This document shows positions 11,001 through 29,922 of a stretch of 64,000 bases of DNA, one piece after another; the stretch's first letter is position 1; every line of letters begins with the position of its first letter. The notes under the pieces are model-generated. The model saw only the letters and a program-made list of their open reading frames with translations, ran no database searches and was not told where the DNA came from. This DNA is from Tubulanus polymorphus. Taxonomy: Eukaryota; Animalia; Nemertea. The stretch is from assembly GCF_964204645.1 (NCBI RefSeq), contig NC_134035.1, positions 9,084,451 to 9,148,450 of the forward strand. Direction: 5' to 3'. Made by a program: the position numbers and the translations under genes.

Positions 11001-14000
11001 TTCAGCACACCGGGGTGAATTTTATCAAGATTTTCAAATCATCTCATGGATGAGCAATTTTGGATATCAATCAGCAATGGAGGGGTTTAAGCAAAGAAAT
11101 ATTTCATACCAAATCACTTTAAACTGAAAAGACTTCACTACCTAGTATGAGTTAACTGAGCTGTTGATACAAGTAGAAGATAACACAAATACAATCAACC
11201 CCCGATATACCGCCCACATCGGTGCAGAACGATTTTGGCGGTACATAGAGTATGGTGGTATATGGGGGGTGTTTTACTATGTATTTGTATAGAGATGTAC
11301 ATTGAGAAAACCTGGCGGTAGGCGAGGGTGGCGGTATAGACTATATTAACTGTATATATTGACTGTAGTGTTGAAAAGCAACATCGTTCTAGCCACTTAA
11401 AATCTCTCTTCGACTTTCAGAAAAAGAAGTCAGCGAATTACTTTTGCCGAGCAACAACATCCGATCGTTACCGACCGATATGAGAAAATTGCGCAACCTA
11501 ACGAAACTCGACATAAGTCGCAACGGTATCCGGTGCACGGGTCCCAACGATTACGGAGGTATGCCGAGCGAGATGGAAATGTTGACGAAACTGGAAACGT
11601 TGATCATGGCCGAGTGTAATTTTCGTTACATCCCGCCAGTCGTCTGGAAATTACAAAGTCTCCTATATCTGGACATCAGTCGTAATAAGATCAACGCGTT
11701 ATCGCCGGACGTCGGCAATCTTTACAAACTGCGTCGTTTGAATTGCCAGGAGACGAACATCTCGACGTTGCCGCCGGAGATCGTCTACTGCGACGACCTC
11801 GAGGAGCTGCTGCTGTGGGGCAACTCGATCGAGACGCTGCCCGAAACGATGGTCGAAATGACGAATCTCGAAACGCTGGCGATCAACGCGCAGGGATTCA
11901 CGCAACTCGTCGACTCGTACATGGAAACGCTGTTACAAAAAGGACAAATCCAGTCGGAGCACGTGCCGGCCGTTCTGTTCGAGATCCCGAAATTGAAAAA
12001 GCTCGATCTCGAAAACACGATGATCAACAACATTCCGTCGAGCGCCAATCGAACGCTACGCGAGCTCTACCTGAACGGCAATTTCTTCTCCGAAATCCCG
12101 ACCGCCGTTCTCAACATGGCCGCCCTCGCCGTGCTCGAAATATCTGACAATTACCTGAAAGCGATTCCGCACGAGATTCAGCTCGCCACGGGTTTGAAAT
12201 CGCTGAAAATGAACAACAATCAAATCGAGAAATTGCCGAAAGCCGTCTGTTCGATGACGAGTCTCGGGGTGCTGGAATTGGGCGGCAATCGTTTGCAAAA
12301 GTTGCCGCGCGACATCGGAAATTTGCGGCATTTGCGCAAGTTGATTCTCGATCGAAACGAACTGCGGATTCTTCCCGATTCGACGTGCGATCTCGCGAAT
12401 CTCGACACGCTCGACTTGACCGCGAATCAAATCGCCGAACTTCCGATCGACATGTACAAGCTGTCGTCGTTGACTACGGCGCATTGTTACCGCAAACTGT
12501 TCAAACACGGACTGTGGCTGCACTTGAATCCGTTGACCCTGCCGCCGGAACAAATCTGGAAAACCGACAACCCGAAAAACATCTACGACTACCTGAAACG
12601 ATGGAAGATTCTGAACACGGAGAATCTTCAACGTCTGAAGGTGATAACCGTCGGTGAACATCAGTGCGGTAAAACGAGTTTACTGAAATCGCTCGAATCC
12701 GGCAAATCGTATTTGACAAAACCTGTCGTCGATAGCACGGAGGTTTTCGCTCAGATGCACGGGCAAACGCCGAATAAAGTTCGGTTCTCGTTGTGGGAAC
12801 TCGGCGGGCACGAAGCGTATCAGGTGACGACTCCGCTGTTTCTCGGCGACAAGTGTTTATACATGCTCGTCTACGATCACGCCGCGTTTCGACCGGACAA
12901 GTTCAACGCGGCGATCGGTCAGTGGTTGAATCTGATCACGACGTACGCGCCGGGGAGCGTCGTCAAAATAGTCGGCACGAAACTCGATTTGCGCGATGAG
13001 GCAGACGGAGAGAATTTCGAAGCAGACGGAGGAAATTTTGAGGCAGACGGAAAAAGATTCGAGGCAGACGGAGAAAGATTCGAGGCAGACGGTGAAAGTT
13101 TCGAGGCAGACGGTAAAAGTTTCGTCGACACGAAATCACGAATAGTTAGACGAATGATCGCGCGACATCTAAACGAATGCGAAGACCAACTGAACGAGAC
13201 TTTGAATCGAATCCTAAAACTGATCGACGACGGTTCCGACGACACGACTACTTCTCGAAAACAACTCGAAAATCAGCGCGAACGACTCGAGTATCTGATC
13301 CGCAATCCGTTACGCGTCGAATCGCGGATCAATCTCGTAACGTCGATCGAAGGCACGGCTGGAATGAACGCATTGATATTCGACCTGGAATCGCTGATCA
13401 TACGGAAAGATCTATTCCCGCACAATCAACGCCACGTTCCCGTTTACTGGAAGAAACTGCAATCGCGTATCAAACAACACGACGGTCACTTCGTGACGAT
13501 CGAACGCGTTCGCGACTACGCGCGCGAGTTCAACATCGTCAACGCCGACGATCTGAACCATTGTCTCGCGCACCTCGTCGATATGGGCGAGATTATCTGG
13601 AAGTCGGACGACCCGCGTTTGAACGACTTCGTTTTTCACTCGCCGACGAAACTGGCCGCCGTTCTCGCGTGTCTGTTCCGCCACGACTTCGACGAGTATT
13701 TCGACTTCGATCGTAATCGCGTGTTCACGTGTAAAGGTCTCTACGACGACTACAACGACTTCACGAAGGCGAAAGACGACGTTTTCACGCACGGCGAAAT
13801 CCCGCGTCCGATTCTGCGGTGTTTGTGGTTTTATTTGCGTCTGCGCGAGGAACGATTCGTCGAGTTGTTGGATATTTTGTCGTCGTTGCGTTGCGCGTAC
13901 GTCGTGCCGCAGCCGACGATCACGACGCCGACGAGTTACCGCGAACCGCTCGTCGTTCTACCGTGGTACAACACGGACGTACAACCCGAGAACCTCGACG

Positions 14001-17000
14001 AATTCTGGCCGGCGAACACCGGCGAATCGGAAGCGCGCGTCGAGTTTGTATTCCCGATCGAATTTTTGCACGGCGTCTTCGAACGGATGTCCGTGCAGCT
14101 GCAGGAACACGTCGACGCGCGCATCGACTGGCAGGATCTAGTTTACGCGACGTACACCGGGGGGAGCTTGCTGCTACAGCGCGGACTACAAATCGACACG
14201 TACGACTTGTCGATTCAGATCGCGATTCGCGGCGAAAATGAAACGATTACCGTCGAGAAACTGAAAGATCTCGCCGAGATTATGAGAGAAATGTTAGAAA
14301 GGCGACCGGGGGTTGTTTGGTACGAGTATTACTCGTCAAATAATTGTGATACGCATATAGCCAGGTACTTAAACAGCGATCTAAATAATGAAAGTTGATC
14401 ATTTATATTAGGTTTGTAAGTTCAGGGGTGGATCACCGTTCAGGAGAGGAAGGTGTCTACTTTTAAACACAATGATTTTTTAGATCTTCTATAATTGGTC
14501 AAACAGTAATTGGCCCGATGATGGCTAGAAGTATTTAGCCGAAACTTTGCTCGAAATATACATCATTTTACTATAGAACTTTCTCTTTTTTTGGCTGAAC
14601 CTATTGTGGGATTTTTCTCAGTATAATAACTGCTTTAAATACATACGAACTTAACGATAGTACATGCGTGCGCTGTCGTTTTTCGAAACGTTCCACGCTT
14701 TAAATGTCTTACCTGAGCGTAAAACGAGAAAATCCGCAGCGATCGAAACGGTACGAAGAACAGGAAAGGAACGATGATTTCGATGACGAATACGATCGCG
14801 ACGCCGAGTTTCTGAAACCATTCCGGAAACTGATGAGCGTACCACGCCAGCGGTGTAGGAATACACTGCGATTCGTAATGATGCAACAGAGCTACAAATA
14901 ACAACAATACACCCGGGTATGAATTTCATAATATGAAAACTTCGTCACAAAGAGTCCGTGAAGATAACTGGAGCTAGTGGTATATTCGACGTTTACTGAA
15001 GATGACTACAAGGGCAGAGCTAGAATTCTTTGAAGGGGCTGGCCTGAATATTGGAGTGGGTACTTAGATTGAAAAGGGCATATCATTGGAATATTGGTGG
15101 GGGTTCCGATGGCCATCCAACAGAAAATCTAGGATGAAAAAGGAGTCAGGGCCCTTGTGGATTTATTTTCGTCTTTCTTAAACTTTTCTTCGCAAAAATT
15201 TTTTTTTTTGAAATTGAAGGGGGTGTTCCAGTCCACCCCCTAAATCAGCACTTGGATTATCAGGATATAGTTTGAAATGTTTCGTTCGGTTTATTCAACA
15301 TTTTAAACTGTTTTTTCCCTCTTTTATGGTGGAATTCCTGACTTATCACGGATATTACACTATTTTTACAGAATTAACCCGACTATTATAAAGAGAAGAA
15401 AATTCGCTGTCTTTTCCTCAGAATAATACCGGTACATGTGATAGGGAAGCCACTGATTTTTCCATTTGATTACACAAAATCCTTTGAATGAATCAGAGAA
15501 ATATCTTCTTTGTTGAAAAATGTCAATTTATTCATTTCTCATGGTGCTCAATAGCATTACCAGAATTCCCAGGTTCGAGGTAAAATTATTCAAATTCCCT
15601 GATTTTTTTCTAGATTTTTCTGATTCCCTGAGTTTTCCAGGTATTTCCAGATCAGTGGCCACCCTCTATTTAATAACAAGAAATATCTAAGACCGTCATC
15701 AAATACCTGTTAAACCCCACCACGTAGGGCAGCCGCTCGTTAGCTTAACAACTCCAGACGCGAACATCAAACGAAACAGTAACCATTTAACGAGCCACAT
15801 TGTTATAGAGTCGTGATGGTGATAGTAAGAACACGAGAAACGGCCGAGTTTCAAATTCATCGGAGCGATGAGAATCGTTAGGAATCCCGCTTCCAATATC
15901 AGACTATCCCTAGAAAACAGAACCAGACGATTTCAGATGGAAATTCAAATAACAATCGTAGATGATACAGTTCCACAGTTGTGAGTTAAGGTTGACTCGG
16001 AAATTTAGTTCATTTTGAATGAGTTTACAGTCAAATCTTAACTCACAACTGGGCCCTAGTATCAGATTGAATGAGATAACAGGTAATGCTTCGAGGTTCA
16101 CGTTTACCTGGTGAAGCTATATATGCTATAAATGAAATATCGTGATTTCTAATAAAATCGGTTAACCTAGAGGTACTTGTTTTCAAATTCAAATAATTAA
16201 TGTATCAAGTTAGAAGTAGCCTTTGTTTAAATGAATTGATAATTTTAGACTCATTAGACTTTCATGACAGATTTACTGTACTCGGTTAACTGTAATTGTA
16301 TAAACAAAGTGTAGATTATGTATTCGTAATATTCATTATAATTCAAACATTAAAAACTTACCATTGGAAATAGAGAAACGTTTGACCAACCTAAAACAAC
16401 AATCAACGATATCGATTTAATCAAAAGTCATTTCCGAAATTTCTTGCAAAAGGAATAAACTGTTTATCATTATTTGACGTGAAATGATACTGAAATGATT
16501 GTGGCCGTGAGTTGAGATTTGAATCTCGAGCTTAAACATTGAAAATAAACTCATTGAACTTTTTGAGTCGAATTCTACCAGGGGCTGTAGATGACTTCTT
16601 AGCTTCCTTCTTTGAGTTCCATTATATAATTGTGTTCTCATGACTAATGACACGCAGTTCCGTAAAAACGAGAACTCTGGAACTGTTGGCAATCATTCCC
16701 TATTTGACTTCGCTAGTACGCCATATTGCAGTATATTTAAGTTATTAGTAATTAGTTTTTATCTCTATTGTAAGTTGTCAACACACTAGGATGGAATTTT
16801 TCAAATTATCTCTTTCGGATATTTATCAGTCAGTACTGAAAACGTTAAATCCATGGAGAATTTAGTGTAACTCTCAAGACAAATGCGCAAATTGTAACGG
16901 AATCAGAATTGGTTCTTCAATTGGTTCTTCAGACCACTGTTTACATTTACCTGATACAAAGAGAAGTATAGAACCCATAGTATGACGAACCCGACGCATT

Positions 17001-18483
17001 CACGAAACGATTTCGCAATCAACATGATGAACGAGAACAGAATACCGATGAGGCAGAGTAAATCCATACCGGTCTCCGGTTCGAGACCGAGTTTAGGCAT
17101 TAGAGACATCAATGTCGGGTGATTCTGCATGAAATCATTGAAATCTTTCGGGGCTTAAAACGAAAATAAATGAGTGTTACTGAGAGTTTATATTCAATAA
17201 TGCATTTAACCCCTCACAAGCTATCACAGTAAAACTCGCCTATTCGGATAACGGTTTCATTCGGATTTTCACTTATTTCGGACTAAAATTCCAGTCCCCT
17301 CTAGTTATTTCTATTCAAATGAAAGTGCACATAATTCGGATTTTGGTTAATTCGGACAAAATATTCCAGCCCCAGGTGATCCGAATTACGCAAGTTCTAC
17401 TGTACTTAATATTCTTACGTTTTGGAACTTTAAGGTGAACCGGTAGGATGCCATTCTCTCCGTAAAGGCCTGAAAATAAAGAACCAGACCAGGTCATTTC
17501 AATGGCTACTAACCTCAGCGATGTAGTTTCAGTAGGGCTAAATAATCACTGGAATAGAAAGCGATATGTTCAATTTAAATCATGATGGGGGTTAAATCAG
17601 TAGGCCTAACCTGTGTGGTTTAGTTTCACGTTCGGATATTTTCACAAACCAGTCAGTAATGAGAAGCCCATCTTATTATAAAAGCTTACCACCAATGAAT
17701 AGGTAACTATCTAGATGAGGGCTAACCCAAATACCAGATTCAGATTGGTATTCTGTAAATCGCACAATGGTATGTAGTCTAGTACCTAGCCGTCGTTCCA
17801 CAAACAACGATGTAGGGAACCAGTAACAACGACTGGTATTCAGACTAAATGGTATTGTACCAACGTCAAACACTAGTTAGTTACCTTATAGTCGGTGGTA
17901 CGCTTTTTTTAATAGGATAGGCTTATACCATAAATTGTGGATTGTGAAATATCTGATCATGAAATTAAAGCATAGACAGGTTACTGACTACGTCAATCAC
18001 CAGTTTTTTAGACTCTCAGCCACACATTATTGGTTATTGATAAAAAAGAAATTGGTTTCATCTTGGGCTAAATCTTATTCTCGGGGTTTCTGGGGTTGGC
18101 ATCCAATGATCATTGTCCTTCCTTCTTATGCCCTTCCTTGTCTTGTTTGTCAATGCTGTCGTCGCATCTCGAGAAGGAAGGAGAGGACCTCTTTCAAGAG
18201 TGCTACATCTACTCTATCTGGCCACTCGAGCACAGCACCAGTTTGCTTTCGAAATAGCCATTATTTTAGGAAGCTCTGTCTAGAATCACTCCAGAACACC
18301 TGGGTGAATCCTTTATAATGAAACCGGCTGCCCTGGGACTCCAAATGGTAATAAAGACTTGATTTAACGTTGAATTGATGGTGTTATACCTGGAATTTGG
18401 ACGTAAAGCGACGCGAATGCGAACAAATATACAACCGACATCGCCCACAGATACAGATCTCTCGTTAGATGATACGAGCTCAT
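343..18483 (-). CDS. LMF2: Lipase maturation factor 2, multi-exon, 3' end beyond the window start
   Basis: GT-AG exons read on the minus strand. 18483-18390 gives [32 protein letters not shown]. Further exons: ~17469-17420 ([10 protein letters not shown]), ~17153-16951, ~16391-16362 (QTFLYFQW), ~15909-15707 (LEAGFL...[22 protein letters not shown]), ~14890-14713 ([17 protein letters not shown]), ~6237-6112 ([11 protein letters not shown]), ~5637-5468, ~5010-4903, 4818-4722, then 4178-4063 or 3051-2933, ~1913-1788 ([15 protein letters not shown]), ~1351-1238 ([16 protein letters not shown]), ~993-888, ~457-343. These are LMF-family motifs and resemble LMF2. Confidence 0.93.
504..857. mobile_element. 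Same Harbinger-like MITE family with an internal 47-bp tandem expansion
   Basis: Starts GGGCCGGTTGCATAGTC. The unit gctcattttggttctataatcaatctaacaacttaagacaggtataa is repeated about five times (~585-820). Confidence 0.7.
2933..3051 (-). CDS. LMF2: LMF2 alternative exon B ([39 protein letters not shown])
   Basis: tttttag acceptor and gtaaga donor. 119 nt, phase 0 in and phase 2 out. Resembles the vertebrate LMF2 segment VPY...LQLANSYGLFRR. Confidence 0.85.
4063..4178 (-). CDS. LMF2: LMF2 alternative exon A ([38 protein letters not shown])
   Basis: gtatag acceptor and gtagta donor. 116 nt, same phases as exon B, with the same VP...W...YGLFR frame. Confidence 0.8.
7715..14398 (+). CDS. MFHAS1: MFHAS1/MASL1-like ROCO protein (LRR repeats, Roc GTPase, COR), nested antisense in an LMF2 intron
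   Basis: Large exon 11421-14398 encodes many LRRs, a P-loop (GEHQCGKTS), a G3-like LWELGG, G4 VGTKLD and a COR-like C-terminus. It splices in frame from exon 10521-10770 (ATG at 10548; gtgagt donor). Candidate first coding exons at 7715-7798 or 9721-9792 are both phase 0 and in frame; the 5' structure is less certain than the rest. Confidence 0.8.
12998..13123 (+). repeat. Coding 21-bp minisatellite, 6 copies (EADGxxF) inside the Roc domain
   Basis: Six copies of a gaggcagacggagagaatttc-like unit, translating as [42 protein letters not shown]. Confidence 0.95.
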
Positions 18484-19040
18484 TGTGGCATCGATTTCTG
18501 GGCAGAAAAAGCGAGGAATTTAGCGAGAATGTTTTCTATTTTTTGAAGCGGCTTAAAGAGCCGAACAACATCTGTTTCGGGTACATGCGCATCGAAATAG
18601 TTATCCGCTTCGGAAAGTATTTTCTACTGTTCAAACTGCATTTATTACCAAATTATGAATAGAAATAATGAAAATTAACTAAAGAACGTGATATGTGGTT
18701 TTAATCGCCGATTTAAAAGTCGATGCACTCAATGAACACGTTTGTATGCAAATTGCAGATGCGGACTCGGCAACCGGACGAAATGAAGCATCCTCCACCT
18801 TCCACAAACAAGAGAAAAAGAGGACGATATTTAAATACTATATAAGAATATATTTACACTATAATAGTAATGATAATATTAATAATGTGACATATAACCA
18901 CCATATTTTACACAATCATTAACATAAAATTCTGTACCATTAAAAATCGGTTGCTATAAAAAAATAAATAGTTCGACTCGAATCCCTTGCGGCGACGAAC
19001 TGCCGTGTAAAACTGAAGTCCAAATAAAAAATTTATATAA

Positions 19041-22000
19041 TCATATATCGTCGTGAGACGGAACTCGGTATCCTTCCAGTTCCTCGTGATGTCGTTTCAG
19101 TGATAAAAGTTTCAGCGATACTGAATCCATACCGGACTCCGATGAGTTTTCATCAGTAGAGATTTGTAGGTTATAATTATTAGCCTGAAAATATAAAAGA
19201 TGAATTATTAATTCATCAAAGATGAACACAAGACGAACCATGCGCCACGCCCTAAATAACAAGGAGGCCACTTTCCATCCATTTACTAATTCCCTGAGTT
19301 TTTTCCTGAATTTTTTGTTATAACACAATTCCATGAGTGAATCCAAGAAATTTCTAGGTTGAAAATGTCATGTTACAATTTATTCATTTCTCATCCCTGA
19401 ATTTTCCAGGTTTTAGGTTCAATTTGTCAACGTTTCCCTGATTTTTTCTAGATTTTTCTGATTCCTTCAGCAATCCAGTCTTTCAAGTCAGTGGCAACCG
19501 TGAATAACCAATTTTCCCCCTACTAACATTACAGAGATGCACAAAGGGCTTCACAAATCCCCCTGCAAAAAATTCCTTATTTTGAAAATTCCTATGAAAG
19601 GATTAATTAAGACGACTAATAAGAAACTACGAAGTTTAGTAACAAAAGGATATTGACATTAGAAATTATTTCTTGAATTATTTTCTTATTTAGAAATACT
19701 TCTACATCATGCACTGCCCTGACTATTTCCCCAACCCTTCCTAATTTCTTTACAAGAGGTTCCTTGCGTAATTCATTACCGGTACCAGCAAGAAAACCTA
19801 GACAATTTTCATGATTTTCAAGAAGAGTCGTTATTAGATATTTTTGAAGAAAATATGCAATTTCTGAAAGTGAGTGTTGTTAAAAAATTTGCAATCTTTG
19901 ATTCGACGAAAAGGGGAACCTTAAGACCCGAGACCACCCCCCAAAATTCACTTCTGGGAATTGAAACGCGTGTCTAGTAATGTGTGATGCGTACCAGTTG
20001 TAACGTAGCGGCGAACAGGCGACAAACTTCGTGCGGCGTTTGAGTTTTAGCGATGTCGTTAAACGACACCGATCGCGATTTAGTCGGGAAACTTTCGAGA
20101 ACGGCGCTGCCATACGAGTGAATATCGAACGCCGGGCGAGTTTCCTGCGAAATAGAAATACAAAATTATTCCGATAAAACTAGCAGTATTTCAGTAAAAC
20201 TATCATCAACTGAACCGAAAAATGTCGAACGAACCTCTTCTTCTAGTTTCGGGACGACTTTATCTTCCCATTCACCGACTCGCTTCGATAATTCAGTCAA
20301 TTCGGCGAATTTCTGAGCACTCGTCAGAAATTCATCCTACGAAATAAGAAAACATACATCGAGGTTATGTTCTGTTCCCTACCAGCTTGGAAAACAACCC
20401 ATATGGGAATCATTCACTTTACATCCACGTAAAATATGAATTTTTCAACCCCTCATGTATGCAATAACAGCCATTTTTCATACACATTATTTAAGCATTA
20501 CAGTACGCAATTGCACGGACCCCTCCACATCCCGTAATGTGTACGTAATAAATGAATGACTCCTGCAATCCCGCGTAATTCAGTTATGAATTTCTCCGAA
20601 ATTTTATTATCTGGGTCCAAAGTTTAACTAATTTTTTATGTAATTGCTATTGGTTACTTCATATTTTCAATGAGGAAAACGATTCAAACTTAACCAATTT
20701 TGGATTAAACTTTTTTTCATGAAACTTGGCCCGGTACTTACCACATATTTTCTAACCAACTCCTCGTACGATTGCGAACACAATAAATCAGATTGCTGCG
20801 AGAATAAATCATCGTCGATTCGAGCTGCGTTCACGGCTAACGGGTCGTCGTGAATATCAACCGCCGCGCCGACATCATCAAAATCAACAACATTATCATC
20901 ATCTCCGTCATCGTCGTCAGCGGCATCTAATAATAACAACAGTTCAGAAAGAACACAAAATATAAAATCAAAGCTTCTCGTAACGATGGGCATATTCTTG
21001 AAAAAAATACAACTTCCAACGCAGCTAAATCTTAATGACCTGCAGGTATACCGAGTTAAGACTGAAAAGAGTCTGATGACTTCGGTTAAAGGGTCGTTAC
21101 TTTCTCATGTCGATCCGATGAGCTTTCGGTAGATTTTACACTCATATATGGCCTGGTATCACTTGGTGCTAGTTCCCTTCAACGACAGACCAGCTCACAA
21201 ATCATACCAGGACACATACAGTATAATCCTTACGTCTATAATATCCTGATTCAACGATAGAATAGACGCCAATACATCGGCAGCACAACACGATCGTTTG
21301 CGGCTTACTTGTCCGTAGAGTTATAGGGTATGAATGTTTTCGATTGAGAATTCAAATTCGAAATATTTACCCAAATATTCAGGCTCCGTAAATCTCGGTT
21401 CTTCCTCTTCTTGCTCATAAACATCGACAGCGTTGGCTCCATAATTGTTCTGAAATAGTTCAAACCACAAGCTTATAACAGTCATAACGAATCACGGAGA
21501 TATTTGTATCAGGGTCCCTATAGATCAGTCATTCCTGGATATAAGGAGAAAATCTCACATTTCTAGGAAGTGTCTGCATCCCTTAGTTTCATACTGTAGA
21601 TTCTTAAATCAGTACGTTTTATATGGGTAAACCGTTAATTCATGGTTTAGTAAGCAAATTTTTATTCTTACGACTACCTAAACTCGATAACTAATATGGC
21701 AAAAAACAAATCCCAACTATCACAATTTAAGCATAGTTTACTGTACAACTACTAACTAGACAAATATTTCTAATTGCCTATTTCTCAAAATTGAAGGAGT
21801 CTAATTATTCCTCACCGAACGAACCCCTTAAAGGAGTTTCAAAGGAATCAAGAAGTCGTAGGGACCCTGTATGATGAAAATGTGTAAAATACAAACCCGA
21901 ATCAATGTTTTCAGTTGTTTACTGATCTGTTGCCGGCGCTTGTATTCGGTCCAATAAAGACGTTCGAACCCTGCGTACGACGGAACCTTTAACGCATTAC

Positions 22001-25000
22001 TCGTGAATTTTGATCTATGCGAATCTGTAAACGACAAATGAATGAAATTCATCATCGCGATAAATTCTTCAGAGCTTTCATTTTCTTCTTTAAAACTATT
22101 TTCATTCAGAAATATTCCGATATTTTTCTATACAGTAGACTGCGCTTGCATCCAGCGAATGCAGGACTGAGGATTTTCCAAGACGCAGTTGAAGCAGGGA
22201 TGAGTCGTTATCTGACGAAAAATCTGAATTAAGAAAATCTATACATTTCATATTGATATTCAATCTGTCGTCCGGAGCATGTGCGATAATCTGATGTAAC
22301 AAATCCTACTAGAGCCATCCATGAATATGAAGGTCAACAGTTGCCTGAAGCCCTAGTATCACTTGGTGCTAATGTGAGTAAATACAATTAGCCCACAAGT
22401 GATATTAGGACCCGAGAAAATGTAATAGAACTGGCAGAATGAATGGGGAACCCAAAAAACCAGCTCAACAGATGGCGTAGCGAGCAGTGGGTCTTTTGGT
22501 GTCAAAATGCGTTCATTTTCAATGAACTTTGAACTGGACTCCTGAATCCTGATATTATCACAACACCCACCAAATATACAATTCTCTCATTCTTCCTACT
22601 CGGATATCGGTATAGTTTTCATGAAAAATTGATTCATTTTAGGAGAAAATTTCATTCGGATTTGATTGAAATGTAGAAGGAATCGAACGCTGACGACCAC
22701 CTACAAACTTGGCATATGCTCGGAATCCGCAATTGCCACTGTAGCACTCTGGGTATGCAACCCATCGTCGATTATCTATGGGTCATTCCTGGTATCATTT
22801 GGTGCTAGTAAATTCATCTAACCACCACACAAATCATATCAGGAACAATCTCACAAGAGAAACTACTATCATAACTCAATTCTATTTTCCTAGCTAAGTG
22901 GTGAACTCAAATGCATTGCTCTTCACACTTTCCTCGAGATGAAAAGAAACGGTAAATTCCTGGTATCACTTGGTGCTAGAGTTCCCTATAATCGTCCAGA
23001 ACACACAAGTTATAACAGGAAAATACACGTTTCTGTCGGGGGAGCAAAGTAAAACCTAGAACAGAATCCAGTTGTTGAGAGTATTCTAATCTTTCAGCCC
23101 TGGTATCATTTGGTGCTAGCTACTTATTATGATTGATGCTATCACACAAATGATTCCAGGCCTGATAGAACTAGTAGCACTAGGTTCCTGCTATCGACGT
23201 ACATCGGCTAGCATGTGCCCTGGTATCTCCTGGTGCTAGTCGTCTAGTAACACACACTATCACTCAGGATATAACAGGCCACTAACTATTAGCTATCGCC
23301 CAATAATAATATTCACTACTAACTATTCATTCTAATATTTGATTTTCCATAATTCTCCGATTGCTCTACAATCCAGTTATTCGAGTCAAATACTAAACCG
23401 TCGAATTGACATGAGAAATTCCAACCCGAGGATTATAGGATCAGCGAATATGAGAGCACTAGTCCTGATATCACCTGGTGCTAGTATACCGTCTAATCGA
23501 CTAGCACACAGATTATATCAGGATCAGGACACCACACTCTGAATCCTATTCTGAGTATAGTAGAATAACCATTTTTTAACATCACCCGACGATGGTCTCT
23601 ATAGAGTCCGAAACATTATGTCTTTTGTTTTAAACTTATGACAAATAAAACGTTTCTTATCTTTATAAGAATTTTGTGTAAGAATTTTGGGGGTTTTAAA
23701 CTTATTATGGATTGAGAGAAAATCCACATTTTGTCCATATTTTAGTCATTGTACTTACAAGCTTTAGAGAGAAATTGACAGAGAGGAACATCCTTAGTCG
23801 GTTTGACGTTTCTGTCGCTTTTCTTATTTGTTTTCAACGCAGCAGGAATCACCAGTTTCACTGAAAACAAAAAGGTCAGTCGGAAATGTAAGAAGCATAT
23901 ATAAATCTTAGCAAGAGTCTTCGATAAATAGACATTACCTTTCTTGGGAGGTTTCTCTTTTTCGACAGTCGTTTGATGAGGATCGAGTAGTTGCCAAAAA
24001 TCAGTTTTCTGCAATAACATATCTTATGATAAATAACATAATTTACTGCAATATTCAAGACTTCCAACTTTAGTGTTCAAAATTAATTGAACAATGAGCG
24101 TCTAAAACTAACATGGAGCGGTTGTTTAACTTACCTTTGATTTAGATGCAGTGGCGTCTTCAAGATTAGATGTAAACTGTACTCGTTTACGACGCAGCTG
24201 CATGTGCTGCTGATTTGCATCGGGCTACAAACATAAAACACACCAACATGAACCCTCTACTCAGGGTGGCCACTATCCGTCCATTTAACAAATACAGTGA
24301 CTATTCCAAGGCAAAAATGTTGTTTTTTTTCCCTGATATGACTCTATCGGCTAAGAATCCAATCAATGAACACAGTCAAATATGTTAAACAGACGGAAAA
24401 TTTTCGATCTTATTGACAATATAGCAATCTCAGTAAATTTCCCCTTTTCCCCTGATCTTAAGCTTTTTTTTCATACAAAATTCCCTGAATATTCCCCGAT
24501 TTCCAATAAAGAGGCCACCCTGCTTCATAAAACCATTTATTCGTTCCCCGTGAGAAAAACCTGGTCATTTTCTTCAGAACTTACTAGTTCTTGATGAGGA
24601 GCCTCATTGACAGAAACTTCCGCAGCCGCCGCTGGATCTGGAATTTCATCGAAATCCCCGCCGCCATCGTCATCATCGTAGCGATCATCGCCAACATCAT
24701 CCGACCGAACCTCACACACTTCATCATTTCGCATGACGTCACCCGTAGATGGCGCCGATATTGCCGTCGTTAACTGCGTCGCCGATGACGATTCTTTCAA
24801 CAATGATAAATGCGACAGGTCTAGAATCAGCGATCCGATTCGTAGAATTTCCGACGTGTTCATTCGGAAATCTAAACGACTGCCAATTAATTCTCCTTTA
24901 CGACTGTAAATACGAGAAACACTTTAATTAACGCATTATCTACGCGAGACACAGGCTTCGCGGATCACAAAATCCTTAACTCAGATATTTCCATGACCCT

Positions 25001-27005
25001 TGACCAAAAATTCCCCGATTGAACTATCAAATATCGCCAGGAGTGATTTTCTCAAGAGGCAAACTCTAACACCAGCTGGAGAGCGGGCGGTTAAAGAAAT
25101 AAAGTCCAAATATGGAGAGGCATTGTGGAGAACGACTGTAGACTGGTTGCCTGTCAAATTCTGAATCTAGACTGGTTGCCAGTATAATAAGTTAAGCGTT
25201 ACGTTGAATGCGTGTCTTTCATCGCACATCAAGAAGTTGTTCCCAAGAAATTCCCCAATTTTCCATGCAGGGAAAAGTATCTCTGGTATTCCATGATTTT
25301 CCCTGATCTGTTAAAACCCGGATGGGAATTAGACGAGTGAGAGAGCGATGATTAACAGAATTACCTGATTAATGGATTATCACTTTTATCAATTGCATCT
25401 ATCTTTACAAGCACCATCGGAGTTCTAGTTAAATCTTTTAATATTCCCTGAAATCATCGAAAGTTAAGTGTAAATTGTAGTTTTGTTCATCGGCTTAAAA
25501 CTACTGATATTTCTACTATCAAAACTGCGTAGTTGCCTTAAATTAATTCTTAAGTTAATCCAGAACGGACCCATCTACATCTAAACTTACCAGAGTTCCA
25601 TCTCTTAAATCGATGTTATTTTTAGGCGCCACATCATCAAGAGTTAGAAATTGCTCTTCACCATCGTCAGCATCATCAGCAACGTCATCCCCATCATCTC
25701 CTCCACCGGCCGTGGCGCCTGCTTTCTTTCGGTTATTCTTTCTGAATTAGACAACAACAATTTCATATTAAATATTCGTTTAACTTTAACGGTTTGCTTT
25801 CATAATTTCGGTTCATAATTGCTTACTGCGTCGCGGTGACCATCTCTAAAACTTTACACACATAACTGTACAAGTACTCAACCTGCAGGTACAGAAACAA
25901 TTATTAAACATTTGATTCCAATTCGATTCAAATATCCCACCAAAAAATTCAACAACTCTAAGAGTTAATCAGGGTGGCCACTGTTATTTCACTTGTTTTT
26001 CCCCCGACTATTCCCTGACATATATCAGCTAAGGATCCGATCAATTAACAGTTAAATACATAAGACATAGACATAAACTATTTAATTTTACACGTGATAA
26101 TTATCCCTGACTTTTAAAAATATATTTCCATTATTTCTAGCTCCGACTATAATTACACCTATTTGTATCATTCTCACCTAATTGATTTGAGTGAGGTGTA
26201 CTGAATTATCAAAAAGTTTCTCAAATTACGAAGAAAAAGCCAAGCACAAACCTTTTTGCTATAAACACAAGCCGAGCCTTGTATGAGCATCGCCGCCTCG
26301 GCAAAATTCACCGTAGTTTTCCCTCCATCAAACGATATCTGAATCTGACCGACCTGTGAATGAAACTCATATTTTTTTATCTCACAAAATTATACGTCGA
26401 ATGGGGAATTTTGTCATCCTTGATCAAATTCAATACTTTTCGATTCAACTTTGAATTCATTTTCATCGATGTCTATTTTTACGGCAAAATTCTAATAATA
26501 CGCAAAGAATCGAAGAACAAGTCGATGTTAATAGGAATCTTCGATCCAAGCTCGTCTTCCAATAATCCTTTCCCTCAATTTTTCAGGGATGAAAATATAT
26601 TGAAAAAGTCGGAAAATATCCCGAATTAGAGCCGCTTTTCCAATGAGACGCCATATTGGTTTCTTCGACTCCACAATTGTGCTAACCAACGCCAAAAACT
26701 GTCTTAAGGAGCACTCCTTAAGGGGCTCCGATATGACGTGCGTGATTGAGGCGATTTACACTGATCTCAGGAATGACGAAAATAAAAGAGAAAGTCGGCA
26801 ATCCGTCTATGGTTGGAAGATTTTCATCCCCGATTTTTAGATTTAATTAACGATGATGATAAAATGTGGGAACCTGTTGAAGGTAGTCGTCTAATTGCTC
26901 CGCTATTTGAACGTTCCAATTTTCGTTCAGATCGCGAATGATCGGATGCATCAACTGAGCGAGATGCCCGGCTGCATCACCGCCTGCCGCTGCAGTTTCA
27001 CCCAT
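19041..27005 (-). CDS. NCAPH2: Condensin-2 complex subunit H2 (kleisin beta), ~15 exons
   Basis: Exon 27005-26874 ([25 protein letters not shown]), 26353-26252 ([29 protein letters not shown]), then VEYLYS. C-terminal exons give [29 protein letters not shown] and ANNYNLQI...LKLLS, ending at the stop at 19041. These match the CAP-H2 N- and C-terminal domains. Confidence 0.93.
21150..21211 (-). ncRNA. Pre-miRNA-like hairpin 1, miR-29-family seed; predicted 3p UAGCACCAAGUGAUACCAGGCC
   Basis: ~60-nt fold-back cctggtat...ataccagg in an NCAPH2 intron. Two G-U pairs on the minus strand; CNNC (CUAC) at +18. Confidence 0.8.
22350..22410 (-). ncRNA. Pre-miRNA-like hairpin 2; predicted 3p UAGCACCAAGUGAUACUAGGGC
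   Basis: Stem cctagtatcacttg/caagtgatattagg plus an upper stem; CNNC (CUUC) at +18. Confidence 0.8.
22786..22845 (-). ncRNA. Pre-miRNA-like hairpin 3; predicted 3p UAGCACCAAAUGAUACCAGGAA
   Basis: Stem ttcctggtatcatttggtg/cacacaaatcatatcaggaa; CNNC (CGAC) at +16. Confidence 0.8.
22957..23021 (-). ncRNA. Pre-miRNA-like hairpin 4; predicted 3p UAGCACCAAGUGAUACCAGGAA
   Basis: Stem ttcctggtatcacttggtg/cacacaagttataacaggaa; CNNC (CAUC) at +16. Confidence 0.8.
23094..23164 (-). ncRNA. Pre-miRNA-like hairpin 5; predicted 3p UAGCACCAAAUGAUACCAGGGC
   Basis: Stem tcagccctggtatcatttggtgctagc/gctatcacacaaatgattccaggcctga. Confidence 0.8.
23217..23280 (-). ncRNA. Pre-miRNA-like hairpin 6; predicted 3p UAGCACCAGGAGAUACCAGGGC
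   Basis: Stem with compensatory changes (tcctg/cagga); CNNC (CGUC) at +18. Confidence 0.78.
23462..23523 (-). ncRNA. Pre-miRNA-like hairpin 7; predicted 3p UAGCACCAGGUGAUAUCAGGAC
   Basis: Near-perfect stem tcctgatatcacctggtgctagt/actagcacacagattatatcagga with a compensatory A-U pair. Confidence 0.8.
24262..24522. mobile_element. Representative of an abundant CAGGGTGGCCAC...GTGGCCACCCTG non-autonomous element family
   Basis: Terminal inverted CAGGGTGGCC/GGCCACCCTG with internal TTCCCTGA repeats. Related copies lie near 3757, 5700, 9044, 15450-15665, 19262, 25970, 36353, 38550, 40675, 41588, 50413, and nested at 53903-54546/54193-54529. Superfamily uncertain. Confidence 0.7.
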
Positions 27006-27490: not shown

Positions 27491-28830
27491 ATCACTTATT
27501 CAAGACAGATTTTTTCAGACAAACAACACTCTAATTAGGATAGATAAGGATAGATTTTAATTATTTTTCAAAATTTATAATCGACGAGAGTAGATAGCTT
27601 TGGAAATTAATGCGCGCACGGATCGGACTACTGGTCGCACACTCGCTTGCCACAGAAAATAGAAATCCCTTCAAATAGTACACAATCTAACTTACCCTGG
27701 CTACGCGCTTTTCAGGCTTGTAGAGGGTGTTTCTCGGTTGTTTTCTTCAGCCTTTTCCTCTATATATGCTAAAAAATAAAATTCAATCGGATTGATATAA
27801 TCAGATGACGCAAAATACACGAGATTTCGAAGTCGGGTTTTCACTTACTGGTATTTGAAGTTACACACGATTGAAAGCCCTTTAAAAACCATATCTAACT
27901 GCCTTGGCGATTAATTTAACTAATACTGACAGTATAAATCCCTCAGACGCCCGTTGAACCGACGGGAGTCGACGAGAGTTCAACCAGAATGAAAATCAAC
28001 GAAAAGAATTCATTACCGGAAACAACTTCTCCACACTTGATAATCCTAAAATGTGGATATCTGCAAATGGCTCTATGCCATATAAGTCCAAGAGACGTCT
28101 TGTGTGTCAACCGGCCATAATAAATATTTTTGAACTTTTTTCCAATACTTTGTTCCCCATATTGTCTTTATAGTCATTAATGAGCTATTCGTTTTGCATT
28201 TCGCGTATCAAAATAATACGGGTTCGAACCCTGAAGTTCGCGCATGGACGTTGGTCACGCTCAATGAATGTGGAGCCCCGGGGAAATATGAACCGTGAAA
28301 TCTGCGTCAAAACGTGCCGTCAAAACAAACAGTGAAAAAGTGATTTCAGATGAAAAATAGTTAAAATCGAACTCGGGATGCATGATTATTTCATGAGCTG
28401 GTTTTGACCAGCTGCTGGGTTATGCCATGGTCGAGGAGGATGAGTTGGGGGGTTAAGCCCAAAGAGGGACTATCGGGCTAAATCAGGAACGAAGTGACAC
28501 CGGATCGGAGCGGAACCAGACTTGAGGCTTAATTTTGAAGGACTTGTCGCATCCTAAAATGGGCACATTCATGTCGAAGCAGGCAGCATTGGATCCAAAT
28601 TTGAGTTCTATGATTACTCCCGCGCTGAAATCCACCAACCCAATTATCTTTGTTGTCTAAAAAGGCACTCAAAAATGTGATGGACTTCACGTCCTCCTGC
28701 TGGCCTAGGTCCGCACCTGCACATCAAATGAAGAAACAACACTATTTTTTCAAGTTCGTTAGGTTCTCCGTTAAATACTTCTGGCAACAGTTAGAAACAA
28801 ATTATCTATATGAATTATGTTTTCAGTACG

Positions 28831-29922
28831 ATGGATGCTACAGATGAAGAAAATGAACACACTCCAGTGCATACTGACGTCTCTGAGGCTGATATACACG
28901 AGGTCCTATCGATGAAAATAGCCACAGCAATCGCCATCATATCTCTGAAACCAGACGGACTGACAGGCGAACAATACGCCCGAATCCTCTTTCAACAGAT
29001 GCACGATCGACTCGAGAATATGACGAAAACATCGGCGACGCGTGAAAACGAGGAATTCGAACTGCGTCTTCGAGTGGAAGATTTGGAAAAACGACTCGGC
29101 GAGGAATCCGCAGTACCAGCACCAGCAGCAGCCGCAGTTGATTGCGATGAATCACTGTCGACTGTCAGCAGCCGCGTGGCACGAGGTCCTCGTACGTTTT
29201 TCAAGAGCTATCAATTCTTACAGACTTATTCCAAACTCAGTCGATCGGAACAAATATCGAAAGTCGAATCGCTCGACGAAAATTTGGCGACTATTTTCGA
29301 AATTATTCGCCGTTTAGTAAACAACGACGATCCGGAGAATCGGGAGCGAGAAACGTCGTTTAAGGTGATGAATCGCGCGTTGGTGATAATCGCAGAAACG
29401 ACTAAACTCGAAAATGCGGATGACGTCGTTCAGAACGCGATGATATCACACATTAATAGATTCCTGGACGAGCTCATAACGACGCTTTACGAACAAGACC
29501 CATTCGATGAAAGTTCGTCGTCGTCATCATCGCCCGCCGTCGATAAACAATTCCTCGTGAATTTAGCCGGGATTTTAACCGGTTGTTCGGCCAGAGTTTT
29601 CGTGCGTAGTTTCGAGGAAATTCTGTCACGAATTGGCGAATTCACGAACGAGCTGCGCGAATGGAAACGAGGCGAAGGCGCTGCTGAACGCGAATTGGAC
29701 CCGGTTCGTTGCGAAAACGTTTACTACTTGATGAAACTGGGCGAAGATTCTTTACGCGCCGTTTGTGAAAATCCCGATTTAAAGCGCGCTTTGAGCGACG
29801 AAAAATTTGCCGAATTTCAGAATTTAGCCGACGATTGTTTACTGCACGTATCGGACGAGTTTCCCATGTTTTGCTGTTGCATGTGGACGTTACAAGATTT
29901 AATGGAACGAATTAGAAAATAG
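28831..29922 (+). CDS. MEI4: Meiosis-specific protein MEI4/Rec24-like, single coding exon
   Basis: N-terminal KIATAIAIISLKPDGLTGEQYARIL and C-terminal LLHVSDEFPMFCCCMWTL resemble the conserved MEI4 signature motifs. The ATG at 28831 follows a ttttcag acceptor, implying a 5' UTR intron. Confidence 0.75.
   Translation: MDATDEENEHTPVHTDVSEADIHEVLSMKIATAIAIISLKPDGLTGEQYARILFQQMHDRLENMTKTSATRENEEFELRLRVEDLEKRLGEESAVPAPAAAAVDCDESLSTVSSRVARGPRTFFKSYQFLQTYSKLSRSEQISKVESLDENLATIFEIIRRLVNNDDPENRERETSFKVMNRALVIIAETTKLENADDVVQNAMISHINRFLDELITTLYEQDPFDESSSSSSSPAVDKQFLVNLAGILTGCSARVFVRSFEEILSRIGEFTNELREWKRGEGAAERELDPVRCENVYYLMKLGEDSLRAVCENPDLKRALSDEKFAEFQNLADDCLLHVSDEFPMFCCCMWTLQDLMERIRK

What the first reader, a model, noticed from the sequence alone, without database searches (positions are those of the whole stretch)
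21150..23523. Expanded intronic cluster of seven miR-29-family microRNA hairpins inside the condensin II gene NCAPH2
Seen: seven ~60-nt hairpins (one at 21150-21211; six in the long intron ~22027-23753). Each has a conserved ~22-nt arm beginning UAGCACCA on the host-sense (minus) strand, divergent loops and flanks, and a shared bulge. Several show compensatory stem changes, and five of seven have a CNNC motif 16-18 nt downstream of the predicted 3' end. Known: AGCACCA is the MIR-29 family seed (miR-29/83/285/995/998/746), CNNC at about +17 is a Microprocessor-enhancing motif, and Drosophila mir-998 and mir-995 sit in introns of the cell-cycle genes E2f1 and cdc2c/Cdk2. Inference: a lineage-specific polycistronic miRNA expansion with a constant seed and diversified 3' halves, co-transcribed with a mitotic condensation gene. 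That would give a high-dose, proliferation-coupled repression module.
Basis: partly seen in the sequence, partly recalled or inferred. Interest (0 to 1): 0.92.

Follow-up and report, generated by a model that had tools for sequence, protein, structure and literature searches.

The report
Seven intronic miR-29-like hairpins in NCAPH2
Two introns of the condensin II gene NCAPH2 in the ribbon worm Tubulanus polymorphus carry seven well-formed, selectively conserved microRNA-type hairpins with the miR-29 seed; they belong to a much larger genome-wide expansion, and their expression could not be tested.

Summary
UAGCACCA occurs seven times in the window, always on the minus strand (0.94 expected). 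Each copy opens the 3' arm of an ~80-nt hairpin.

Across the seven copies, identity is 0.86 in the 3p arm and 0.71 in the 5p arm. It is 0.25-0.28, about random, in loops and flanks. 12 of 25 stem pairs show compensatory changes, and 5 of 7 copies have CNNC at +16 to +18 (P about 2e-4).

The host is the RefSeq condensin-2 subunit H2 gene of Tubulanus polymorphus. Six hairpins lie in intron 22025-23758 and one in intron 20931-21371, all sense.

At least 60 hairpins of this type lie in about eight loci. Single copies or small clusters sit in sense introns of ANAPC4, exportin-4 and probably DNA ligase 1. The rest sit in large mixed tandem arrays with sister UAGCAC hairpins. A contig from another organism carries an identical 22-nt arm in the same cluster order.

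The family is clustered, not dispersed, and shows no transposon features.

Rfam mir-29/mir-83 matches are significant but below gathering scores. No RNA run was available, so processing and host co-expression remain inferred.

Verdict: very probably real miRNA genes and new MIR-29-seed members. Interest is moderate.

The parts
21141..21221 (-). Hairpin H1; predicted 3p arm 21171-21150, UAGCACCAAGUGAUACCAGGCC
   Evidence: Fold -40.9 kcal/mol, z -6.25. CM R1 75.2 bits. Rfam mir-83 32 bits, E 0.004. CNNC at +18. Lies in intron 20931-21371.
22341..22421 (-). Hairpin H2; predicted 3p arm 22371-22350, UAGCACCAAGUGAUACUAGGGC
   Evidence: Fold z -4.22. The C-to-U change in the 3p arm is compensated by G-to-A in the 5p arm. 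CNNC at +18.
22777..22857 (-). Hairpin H3; predicted 3p arm 22807-22786, UAGCACCAAAUGAUACCAGGAA
   Evidence: Fold z -3.88. CM 74.4 bits. CNNC at +16.
22948..23028 (-). Hairpin H4; predicted 3p arm 22978-22957, UAGCACCAAGUGAUACCAGGAA
   Evidence: Fold z -4.58. CM 69.1 bits. CNNC at +16.
23088..23168 (-). Hairpin H5; predicted 3p arm 23118-23097, UAGCACCAAAUGAUACCAGGGC
   Evidence: Fold z -6.95. Best Rfam mir-29 match, 36.0 bits, E 3.9e-5. The 22-nt arm is identical to the arm in metagenome contig L022. CNNC only at +20 and +23.
23208..23288 (-). Hairpin H6; predicted 3p arm 23238-23217, UAGCACCAGGAGAUACCAGGGC
   Evidence: Fold z -2.96. The AA-to-GG change at arm positions 9-10 is compensated by UU-to-CC in the 5p arm. 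CNNC at +18.
23453..23533 (-). Hairpin H7; predicted 3p arm 23483-23462, UAGCACCAGGUGAUAUCAGGAC
   Evidence: Fold z -3.91. CM 79.4 bits. Rfam mir-83 33.7 bits, E 0.0016. No CNNC within 30 nt.
22025..23758 (-). NCAPH2 intron of 1734 nt that hosts H2-H7
   Evidence: GTAAGT donor at 23758 and AG acceptor at 22025, read. Flanking exons match RefSeq protein P0121 up to about residue 371 and from about residue 372.
20931..21371 (-). NCAPH2 intron that hosts H1
   Evidence: Exon 21449-21372 covers P0121 residues 409-437 and exon 20930-20742 covers residues 437-499. GT donor at 21370.
19044..27005 (-). Host gene: condensin II subunit H2 (NCAPH2), coding span
   Evidence: P0121 is XP_074659993.1, 630 aa. 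It maps as 12 tblastn segments on the minus strand, and two of these span an intron. CNDH2_N, CNDH2_M (weak) and CNDH2_C are all on the minus strand and are the only matches in the genome.

Best explanation
The seven loci are canonical animal miRNA genes: Microprocessor and Dicer substrates that yield a 3p-arm miRNA beginning UAGCACCA, with seed AGCACCA.

They are old paralogues of a nemertean expansion derived from, or seed-equivalent to, the MIR-29 family. They lie in sense orientation in two introns of the Tubulanus polymorphus NCAPH2 gene. They are most simply made from the NCAPH2 pre-mRNA, so their dose would follow transcription of this proliferation-linked gene.

Shown here:
- hairpin anatomy;
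- selection on the arms and on base pairing;
- CNNC enrichment;
- intronic sense position;
- the family census, and the presence of the family in another organism.

Inferred:
- actual processing;
- which arm is loaded;
- co-transcription with the host;
- any target or function.
For: Motif and fold:
- Seven same-strand copies against 0.94 expected.
- All fold as single hairpins, z -3 to -7.
- Geometry fits pri-miRNAs: a duplex of about 22 bp, about 10-14 bp of basal stem, and an 11-19 nt loop.

Selection:
- Identity among the seven copies is 0.86 in the 3p arm, 0.71 in the 5p arm, 0.25 in the loop and 0.27-0.28 in the basal flanks.
- RNAalifold finds compensatory changes at 12 of 25 pairs.
- Across 24 family hairpins, 81.7% of cells are paired against 34-52% when partners are slid. 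14 pairs have double changes, and 0 of 500 shuffles reach the observed values.
- Many G-U pairs fit the minus strand only. The covariance model scores the minus strand 25-40 bits higher than the plus strand.

Processing motif:
- CNNC at +16 to +18 in 5 of 7 copies, P = 1.7e-4. It is at +17 in the canonical miR-29 pair and in several of the other intronic copies.

Family resemblance:
- Rfam mir-29 at E 3.9e-5 and mir-83 at E 0.0016.
- The arm shares 15 of 20 positions with the canonical miR-29 arm on C3.

Other organism:
- A metagenome contig has an identical 22-nt arm. Only the 78-nt hairpin aligns to this genome, at 77-78%.

Not a high-copy repeat:
- Hairpin regions have single-copy depth (33-42) in DNA of another individual, while neighbouring intronic repeats reach thousands.
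- The only repeated stretches that cover all seven copies are the two arms.
- Both variants listed inside H1, at 21177 and 21201, spare the 3p arm. One is in the loop and one turns a U-G pair into C-G.

Host:
- The NCBI protein maps with the hairpins between exons.
Against: - No small-RNA or any RNA run was available, so no reads show 5' homogeneity, star strands or 2-nt overhangs.
- Rfam scores are below the gathering thresholds: 36.0 against 46.7 for mir-29, and 33.7 against 44 for mir-83.
- In the large arrays the same arm sits beside hairpins with seeds AGCACAU and AGCACAG. The group could therefore be a nemertean UAGCAC superfamily whose AGCACCA seed only coincides with miR-29.
- Conservation of this particular NCAPH2 cluster in another species could not be tested. 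The Mytilus NCAPH2 locus has none.
- H7 lacks CNNC, and in H5 it is offset.
- Independent intronic promoters cannot be excluded.
Confidence: 0.75

Rival explanations
1. They are real miRNAs but not descendants of mir-29. They would belong to a nemertean-specific UAGCAC superfamily, with types A (AGCACCA), B (AGCACAU) and C (AGCACAG), whose A type converged on the miR-29 seed.
For: - Types A, B and C are interleaved in the same tandem arrays and share nt 1-6.
- Rfam mir-29 and mir-83 scores are below gathering.
- A separate canonical miR-29 pair, with a conventional 3' half, exists on C3.
Against: - The type A arm shares 15 of 20 positions with the canonical arm, not only the seed.
- It has the same 3p-arm placement and the same CNNC at +17.
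- The whole hairpin matches the mir-29 covariance model at E 3.9e-5.
- Insect mir-995 and mir-998 show that true mir-29 descendants can lose similarity in the 3' half (PMC4238352).
Confidence: 0.15
2. They are repeat-derived hairpins from a satellite, MITE or transposon cargo. They fold well but are not processed into functional miRNAs.
For: - The arm recurs at least 60 times, mostly in near-identical ~920-bp tandem units on C5.
- Another first-stage note reports hairpin arrays carried by Chapaev-type transposons elsewhere in this genome (not shown to be this family).
Against: - All copies are confined to about eight tandem, same-strand loci and are not dispersed.
- No transposase-like ORF lies beside the clusters checked.
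- In the window, the only repeated stretches that cover all seven copies are the two arms, with no shared flanks or terminal repeats.
- Loops and flanks have diverged to random while the arms and the pairing are kept.
- The hairpin regions have single-copy read depth.
- CNNC is enriched at the Microprocessor position.
Confidence: 0.07
3. The functional product comes from the plus strand, antisense to NCAPH2. It would be a 5p-arm species complementary to the conserved arm.
For: The plus strand also folds (-24 to -33 kcal/mol) and gives weaker model hits (27-50 bits).
Against: - G-U pairs become A-C mismatches on the plus strand.
- Plus-strand model scores are 25-40 bits lower.
- CNNC is positioned for the minus strand.
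- The resemblance to miR-29 and the host-gene sense are both on the minus strand.
Confidence: 0.03

Closest known systems
MIR-29 family (vertebrate mir-29, C. elegans mir-83/mir-49, insect mir-285/995/998)
   Same: - Seed AGCACCA at nt 2-8 of a 3p-arm product, with a U at position 1.
- 15 of 20 arm positions shared with this genome's canonical miR-29.
- CNNC near +17.
- Significant though sub-threshold matches to Rfam RF00074 and RF00812.
   Different: - The 3' half is AAAUGAUACCAGG-like rather than UUUGAAAUCAGU.
- Scores are below the Rfam gathering cut-offs.
- There are at least 60 copies instead of the usual one to a few, some interleaved with hairpins of other seeds.
Insect mir-998 (E2f intron) and mir-995 (cdc2c intron)
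   Same: These are miR-29-seed paralogues mobilised into introns of cell-cycle genes (PMC4238352). Here the hosts are NCAPH2, ANAPC4 and probably DNA ligase 1.
   Different: - The capture is independent, in Nemertea rather than insects.
- The host genes differ, and there are seven copies in one host rather than one.
- One host, exportin-4, is not a cell-cycle gene.
Large multi-copy miRNA clusters of the mir-430 / mir-427 / C19MC kind (compared from general knowledge)
   Same: The family's arrays on C5 and C1 consist of dozens of tandem units that interleave a few related hairpin types on one strand.
   Different: - This applies to the other loci, not to the window cluster, which holds seven old, diverged copies in a protein-coding host.
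- The seed is unrelated to mir-430.
- No expression data exist.

Membership tests
MIR-29 family | Seed AGCACCA at nt 2-8 of the mature 3p-arm product | tested here: met
   All seven arms begin UAGCACCA and lie on the 3' arm of the fold. That the arm is the loaded strand is inferred.
MIR-29 family | Hairpin reaches the curated Rfam score for mir-29 (RF00074, 46.7 bits) or mir-83 (RF00812, 44 bits) | tested here: not met
   Best scores are 36.0 bits (E 3.9e-5) for mir-29 at H5 and 33.7 bits (E 0.0016) for mir-83 at H7.
MIR-29 family | Descent from the ancestral mir-29 gene, that is homology rather than seed convergence | tested here: inconclusive
   The arm shares 15 of 20 positions with the canonical miR-29 arm at C3:26638069, and the arm placement and CNNC position are the same. 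However, sister types with other seeds share the arrays, and no intermediate genomes could be searched.
Canonical animal miRNA gene (Ambros 2003 / MirGeneDB criteria) | Imperfect hairpin with at least 16 bp between the arms, a stem of about 35 bp and a terminal loop of at least 10 nt | tested here: met
   25 consensus pairs, loops of 11-19 nt and about 10-14 bp of basal stem.
Canonical animal miRNA gene (Ambros 2003 / MirGeneDB criteria) | Conservation pattern: arms conserved, loop and flanks free, pairing kept by compensatory change | tested here: met
   Identities of 0.86, 0.71, 0.25 and 0.27. 14 of 25 pairs have double changes, and 0 of 500 shuffles reach the observed values.
Canonical animal miRNA gene (Ambros 2003 / MirGeneDB criteria) | Reads from both arms with 2-nt offsets and homogeneous 5' ends | not testable with these tools
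   No RNA run holds the stretch. X1 and X2 behave as genomic DNA.
Canonical animal miRNA gene (Ambros 2003 / MirGeneDB criteria) | Presence in a second species | tested here: inconclusive
   The family is present in another organism: contig L022 has an identical 22-nt arm and the same cluster order. Orthologues of this NCAPH2 cluster could not be sought in nemerteans, and Mytilus NCAPH2 has none.
Transposon- or MITE-derived hairpin repeat | Dispersed copies with shared flanks or terminal repeats, or an adjacent transposase | tested here: not met
   Copies are confined to about eight tandem loci. In the window the arms are the only stretches repeated across all seven copies. Read depth is single-copy. 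No transposase domains lie beside the clusters checked.
Mirtron | Hairpin ends coincide with the splice donor and acceptor | tested here: not met
   The introns are 1734 nt and about 440 nt long, and the hairpins lie internally.

The most novel reading that the evidence does not exclude
miR-29-seed miRNAs may have been captured repeatedly and independently by introns of proliferation genes. In this nemertean the hosts are NCAPH2 (7 copies), ANAPC4 (1) and probably DNA ligase 1 (3). In insects they are E2f and cdc2c.

That would point to a selectable coupling between the dose of this seed and cell-cycle transcription across protostomes. In the same genome, the UAGCAC mega-arrays of more than 200 hairpins would be a nemertean counterpart of mir-430-type mass-expression clusters.
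Probability: 0.3. Interest if true: 0.7.

Novelty: new member of a known kind. Interest (0 to 1): 0.5.

Why it matters
If expressed, these are unannotated miRNA genes in a phylum whose curated miRNA complement rests on one distant species, Lineus longissimus (MirGeneDB 3.0).

They would show one of the largest expansions of an ancient bilaterian seed family. They would also give a second, independent case of miR-29-seed genes housed in cell-cycle genes, the pattern noted in insects (PMC4238352).

That makes one question testable: is this seed's dosage functionally tied to proliferation? The window cluster alone is a conventional kind of object, an intronic polycistronic miRNA cluster.

Tried and rejected
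- RNA evidence. The look-up of sequencing runs returned only two runs, neither on record as RNA. Laid on 19001-25000, they cover introns and exons evenly at about 38x with about 2% differences, so they are DNA of another individual. Expression is untestable here.
- Literature. No paper in the library holds the type A arm sequences tried, and the few matches to type B/C strings were unrelated papers. The accession prefix of L022 was not found, and no Tubulanus miRNA study turned up.
- Bacterial and archaeal genome scan. Six matches in MAGs and isolates, taken as chance hits to an 18-base pattern in 596 Gb.
- Relatives' NCAPH2 loci. Exon-level protein searches with 21828-22055 and with the neighbouring 370-aa ORF found nothing.
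- Lineus. The Lineus longissimus MFHAS1 locus keeps LMF1 next door but not NCAPH2, and has no model hit. The Lineus NCAPH2 protein was not among the representatives returned.
- Spliced model. I did not build or search a joined spliced model. Exons were searched one at a time by reference, and the full-length protein used (P0121) is a database entry returned by a tool.
- Mytilus. Its NCAPH2 locus (26 kb) has no UAGCACCA. The only model hit is a 19.9-bit AT-rich match.
- Autoregulation. There is no 8-mer site for the seed on any minus-strand RNA of the window. 7-mer sites lie only in an NCAPH2 intron (25410) and in the neighbouring LMF gene (18234).
- Other hairpin families in the NCAPH2 introns. 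None were found.
- Transposon carriage. No transposase ORFs lie beside the clusters examined.
- PIP box. A PIP-box search meant to fix the first exon of the DNA ligase 1 gene found nothing, so the ligase host remains 'probable'.
- Human entries. Human NCAPH2 entries appeared in a cluster listing and were not used.


Full report
**Observation**

The octamer TAGCACCA occurs seven times in the window, all on the minus strand, at 21171, 22371, 22807, 22978, 23118, 23238 and 23483. 0.94 were expected, and no shuffle reached seven.

Each site folds as a single long hairpin with the octamer at the 5' end of the 3' arm. MFE is -29 to -41 kcal/mol and z is -3.0 to -7.0.

A hairpin scan of the whole gene found no other strong intronic hairpins. 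The only repeated stretches that cover all seven copies are the two arms.

The full stems are nearer 80 nt than 60.

**Anatomy and selection**

An alignment of the seven copies (A1) gives a 25-pair consensus. Twelve pairs keep pairing through changes on both sides, and there are fixed unpaired positions.

Two examples of compensation. AA to GG at arm positions 9-10 in H6 is matched by UU to CC opposite. C to U at position 17 in H2 and at position 16 in H7 is matched by G to A.

Mean identity among the seven copies is 0.86 in the 3p arm, 0.71 in the 5p arm, 0.25 in the loop and 0.27-0.28 in the basal flanks. The copies have therefore diverged to saturation everywhere except the arms, yet the basal stem still pairs. 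This is the classic miRNA profile.

With 24 family hairpins (A2), 81.7% of cells pair, against 34-52% when partners are slid. 14 of 25 pairs have double changes, and no shuffle out of 500 reaches any measure.

G-U pairs and the covariance model favour the minus strand by 25-40 bits.

The stems comprise about 22 bp of duplex, about 10-14 bp of lower stem and an 11-19 nt loop.

CNNC starts 16-18 nt after a 22-nt arm in five of seven copies, with P = 1.7e-4 against the local background. It lies at +17 in both canonical miR-29 hairpins and in several other intronic copies.

**Host gene and organism**

The 984-aa ORF at 11444-14398 is identical to NCBI's MFHAS1 homologue of Tubulanus polymorphus, a palaeonemertean.

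A search with one CNDH2_N exon returned XP_074659993.1, 'condensin-2 complex subunit H2-like [Tubulanus polymorphus]', 630 aa. That protein maps on the minus strand from 27005 to 19044.

H2-H7 lie in the 1734-nt intron 22025-23758. H1 lies in the intron 20931-21371. All are in the sense orientation. Pfam CNDH2_N, CNDH2_M and CNDH2_C match only this locus in the genome.

I built no joined exon model of my own. Exons were searched singly by reference.

A pattern search and model R1 on the whole 268-Mb genome find at least 60 hairpins of this type (type A) in about eight loci.

The first group resembles the window cluster: strong, mutually diverged hairpins in sense introns.
- One hairpin at C2:31834817-31834896 lies between two ANAPC4-domain exons.
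- Three lie inside the exportin-4 gene.
- Three lie at C4:25.612 Mb between K/E/S-rich exons, about 12 kb upstream of the first core exons of DNA ligase 1 on the same strand. This position is probably, but not provably, an intron of that gene.

The second group consists of large arrays: C5:17.81-17.85 Mb (about 38 units of about 920 bp), C5:18.04 Mb, C1:29.82 Mb, C5:3.295 Mb and C2:28.43 Mb. In most of them type A alternates with two sister types. Type B is UAGCACAUGAGUAUGUGGGGAU. Type C is UAGCACAGGUCAGUGCUGGUAA or UAGCACAGGCCUGUGCUGGGAG. The fetched loci hold more than 250 such hairpins.

A canonical miR-29 pair (UAGCACCAUUUGAAAUCAGU and UAGCACCACUUGAAAUCAGU, 186 nt apart) sits on C3.

**Evidence from other organisms**

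Metagenome contig SMVA01271612.1 (L022) carries a hairpin whose 22-nt arm is identical to H5. It is followed by a type B hairpin and several type C hairpins, the same order as the C5 unit.

Only the 78-nt hairpin aligns to this genome, at 77-78%. The contig therefore comes from another organism, and the family and its cluster architecture predate that split.

The Mytilus NCAPH2 locus has nothing comparable. Nemertean NCAPH2 loci other than this one could not be reached.

**Is it a transposon-derived repeat?**

Recurrence is real, but it takes the form of tandem, same-strand clusters.
- No transposase domains lie beside the clusters checked.
- There are no shared flanks in the window.
- The hairpin regions have single-copy depth in DNA of a second individual, while true intronic repeats at 20401-20800, 21401-21800 and 24201-24400 reach depths of thousands.

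The two variants listed inside H1 fall in the loop and at a U-G to C-G position. Neither falls in the 3p arm.

**Comparison with known families**

Rfam gives mir-29 at 36.0 bits (E 3.9e-5; gathering 46.7) and mir-83 at 33.7 bits (E 0.0016; gathering 44). These are significant but fall short of curated membership.

The arm shares the seed and 15 of 20 positions with the canonical paralogue. On this evidence the loci work like MIR-29-seed miRNAs. Descent from mir-29 is likely but unproven.

The nemertean hosts NCAPH2, ANAPC4 and probably LIG1 echo that pattern independently, although exportin-4 does not fit it.

**What remains unshown**

No RNA run exists for this stretch. Processing, arm choice, co-transcription with NCAPH2 and any 'proliferation-coupled, high-dose' effect are therefore inferences.

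No seed-match site suggests feedback on NCAPH2 itself.

No paper in the library holds the type A arm sequences or treats Tubulanus miRNAs. MirGeneDB 3.0 samples Nemertea only through Lineus longissimus.

**Verdict**

This is a real and well-supported cluster of seven intronic miRNA-type genes with the miR-29 seed.

Confidence is about 0.75 for the main reading. Interest is moderate, at 0.5. It would rise if small-RNA data and other nemertean genomes confirm the link to proliferation-gene hosts.

Noticed in passing
G000:C5:17811001-17850000 (L012-L015); also C5:18038001-18054000 (L016/L017), C1:29820001-29836000 (L010/L011), C5:3293001-3299000 (L020), C2:28430001-28437000 (L037): Mega-arrays of miRNA-type hairpins, all on one strand. 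The C5 array has about 38 near-identical ~920-bp units, each holding one type A (AGCACCA), one type B (AGCACAU) and three type C (AGCACAG) hairpins. The C1 array holds about 45 hairpins spaced 110-140 nt apart. The fetched loci contain more than 250 UAGCAC hairpins. The type C arm is internally palindromic.
   Followed up: partly
L022 (metagenome contig SMVA01271612.1, 1095 nt): A contig from another organism carries the same cluster order: type A, then B, then several C. Its type A arm is identical to window H5. Only the 78-nt hairpin aligns to this genome, at 77-78%. The source organism is unknown.
   Followed up: partly
G000:C2:31834817-31834896 (L021:2817-2897, minus): A single type A hairpin (UAGCACCAAUGGAUAUCAGGAU, 56.9 bits) lies between two ANAPC4-domain exons on the same strand. 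It is therefore in an intron of the anaphase-promoting complex subunit 4 gene.
   Followed up: partly
G000:C4:25612285-25612627 (L018:3285-3627, minus) and L033:18-924: Three strong type A hairpins lie between K/E/S-rich ORFs, about 12 kb upstream of the DNA ligase 1 core exons on the same strand. They are probably in an N-terminal intron of that gene, but the first exon was not found.
   Followed up: partly
G000:C1:8019195-8020282 (L009:3192-4283, plus): Three type A hairpins lie inside the exportin-4 gene in sense orientation. One has C instead of U at position 1.
   Followed up: partly
G000:C3:26638069-26638274 (L019:3058-3324, minus): The canonical miR-29 pair, two hairpins 186 nt apart, each with CNNC at +17. 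It scores only 14-22 bits with the model built from the window hairpins.
   Followed up: partly
window 20401-20800, 21401-21800, 24201-24400: These stretches of the NCAPH2 gene reach depths of hundreds to thousands in DNA contigs of another individual. They are high-copy repeats, probably transposon fragments, and are unrelated to the hairpins.
   Followed up: no
window 28810-29922 (+): A 370-aa uninterrupted ORF lies 1.8 kb upstream of the NCAPH2 start. It has no detectable homologue among 5.8 billion proteins and is itself absent from that collection.
   Followed up: partly
window 11444-18483 and L038 (Lineus longissimus): The MFHAS1-like LRR-Roc-COR gene and the lipase maturation factor gene are neighbours in both Tubulanus and Lineus. 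In Lineus the MFHAS1 gene is nested inside LMF1. NCAPH2 is adjacent only in Tubulanus.
   Followed up: partly
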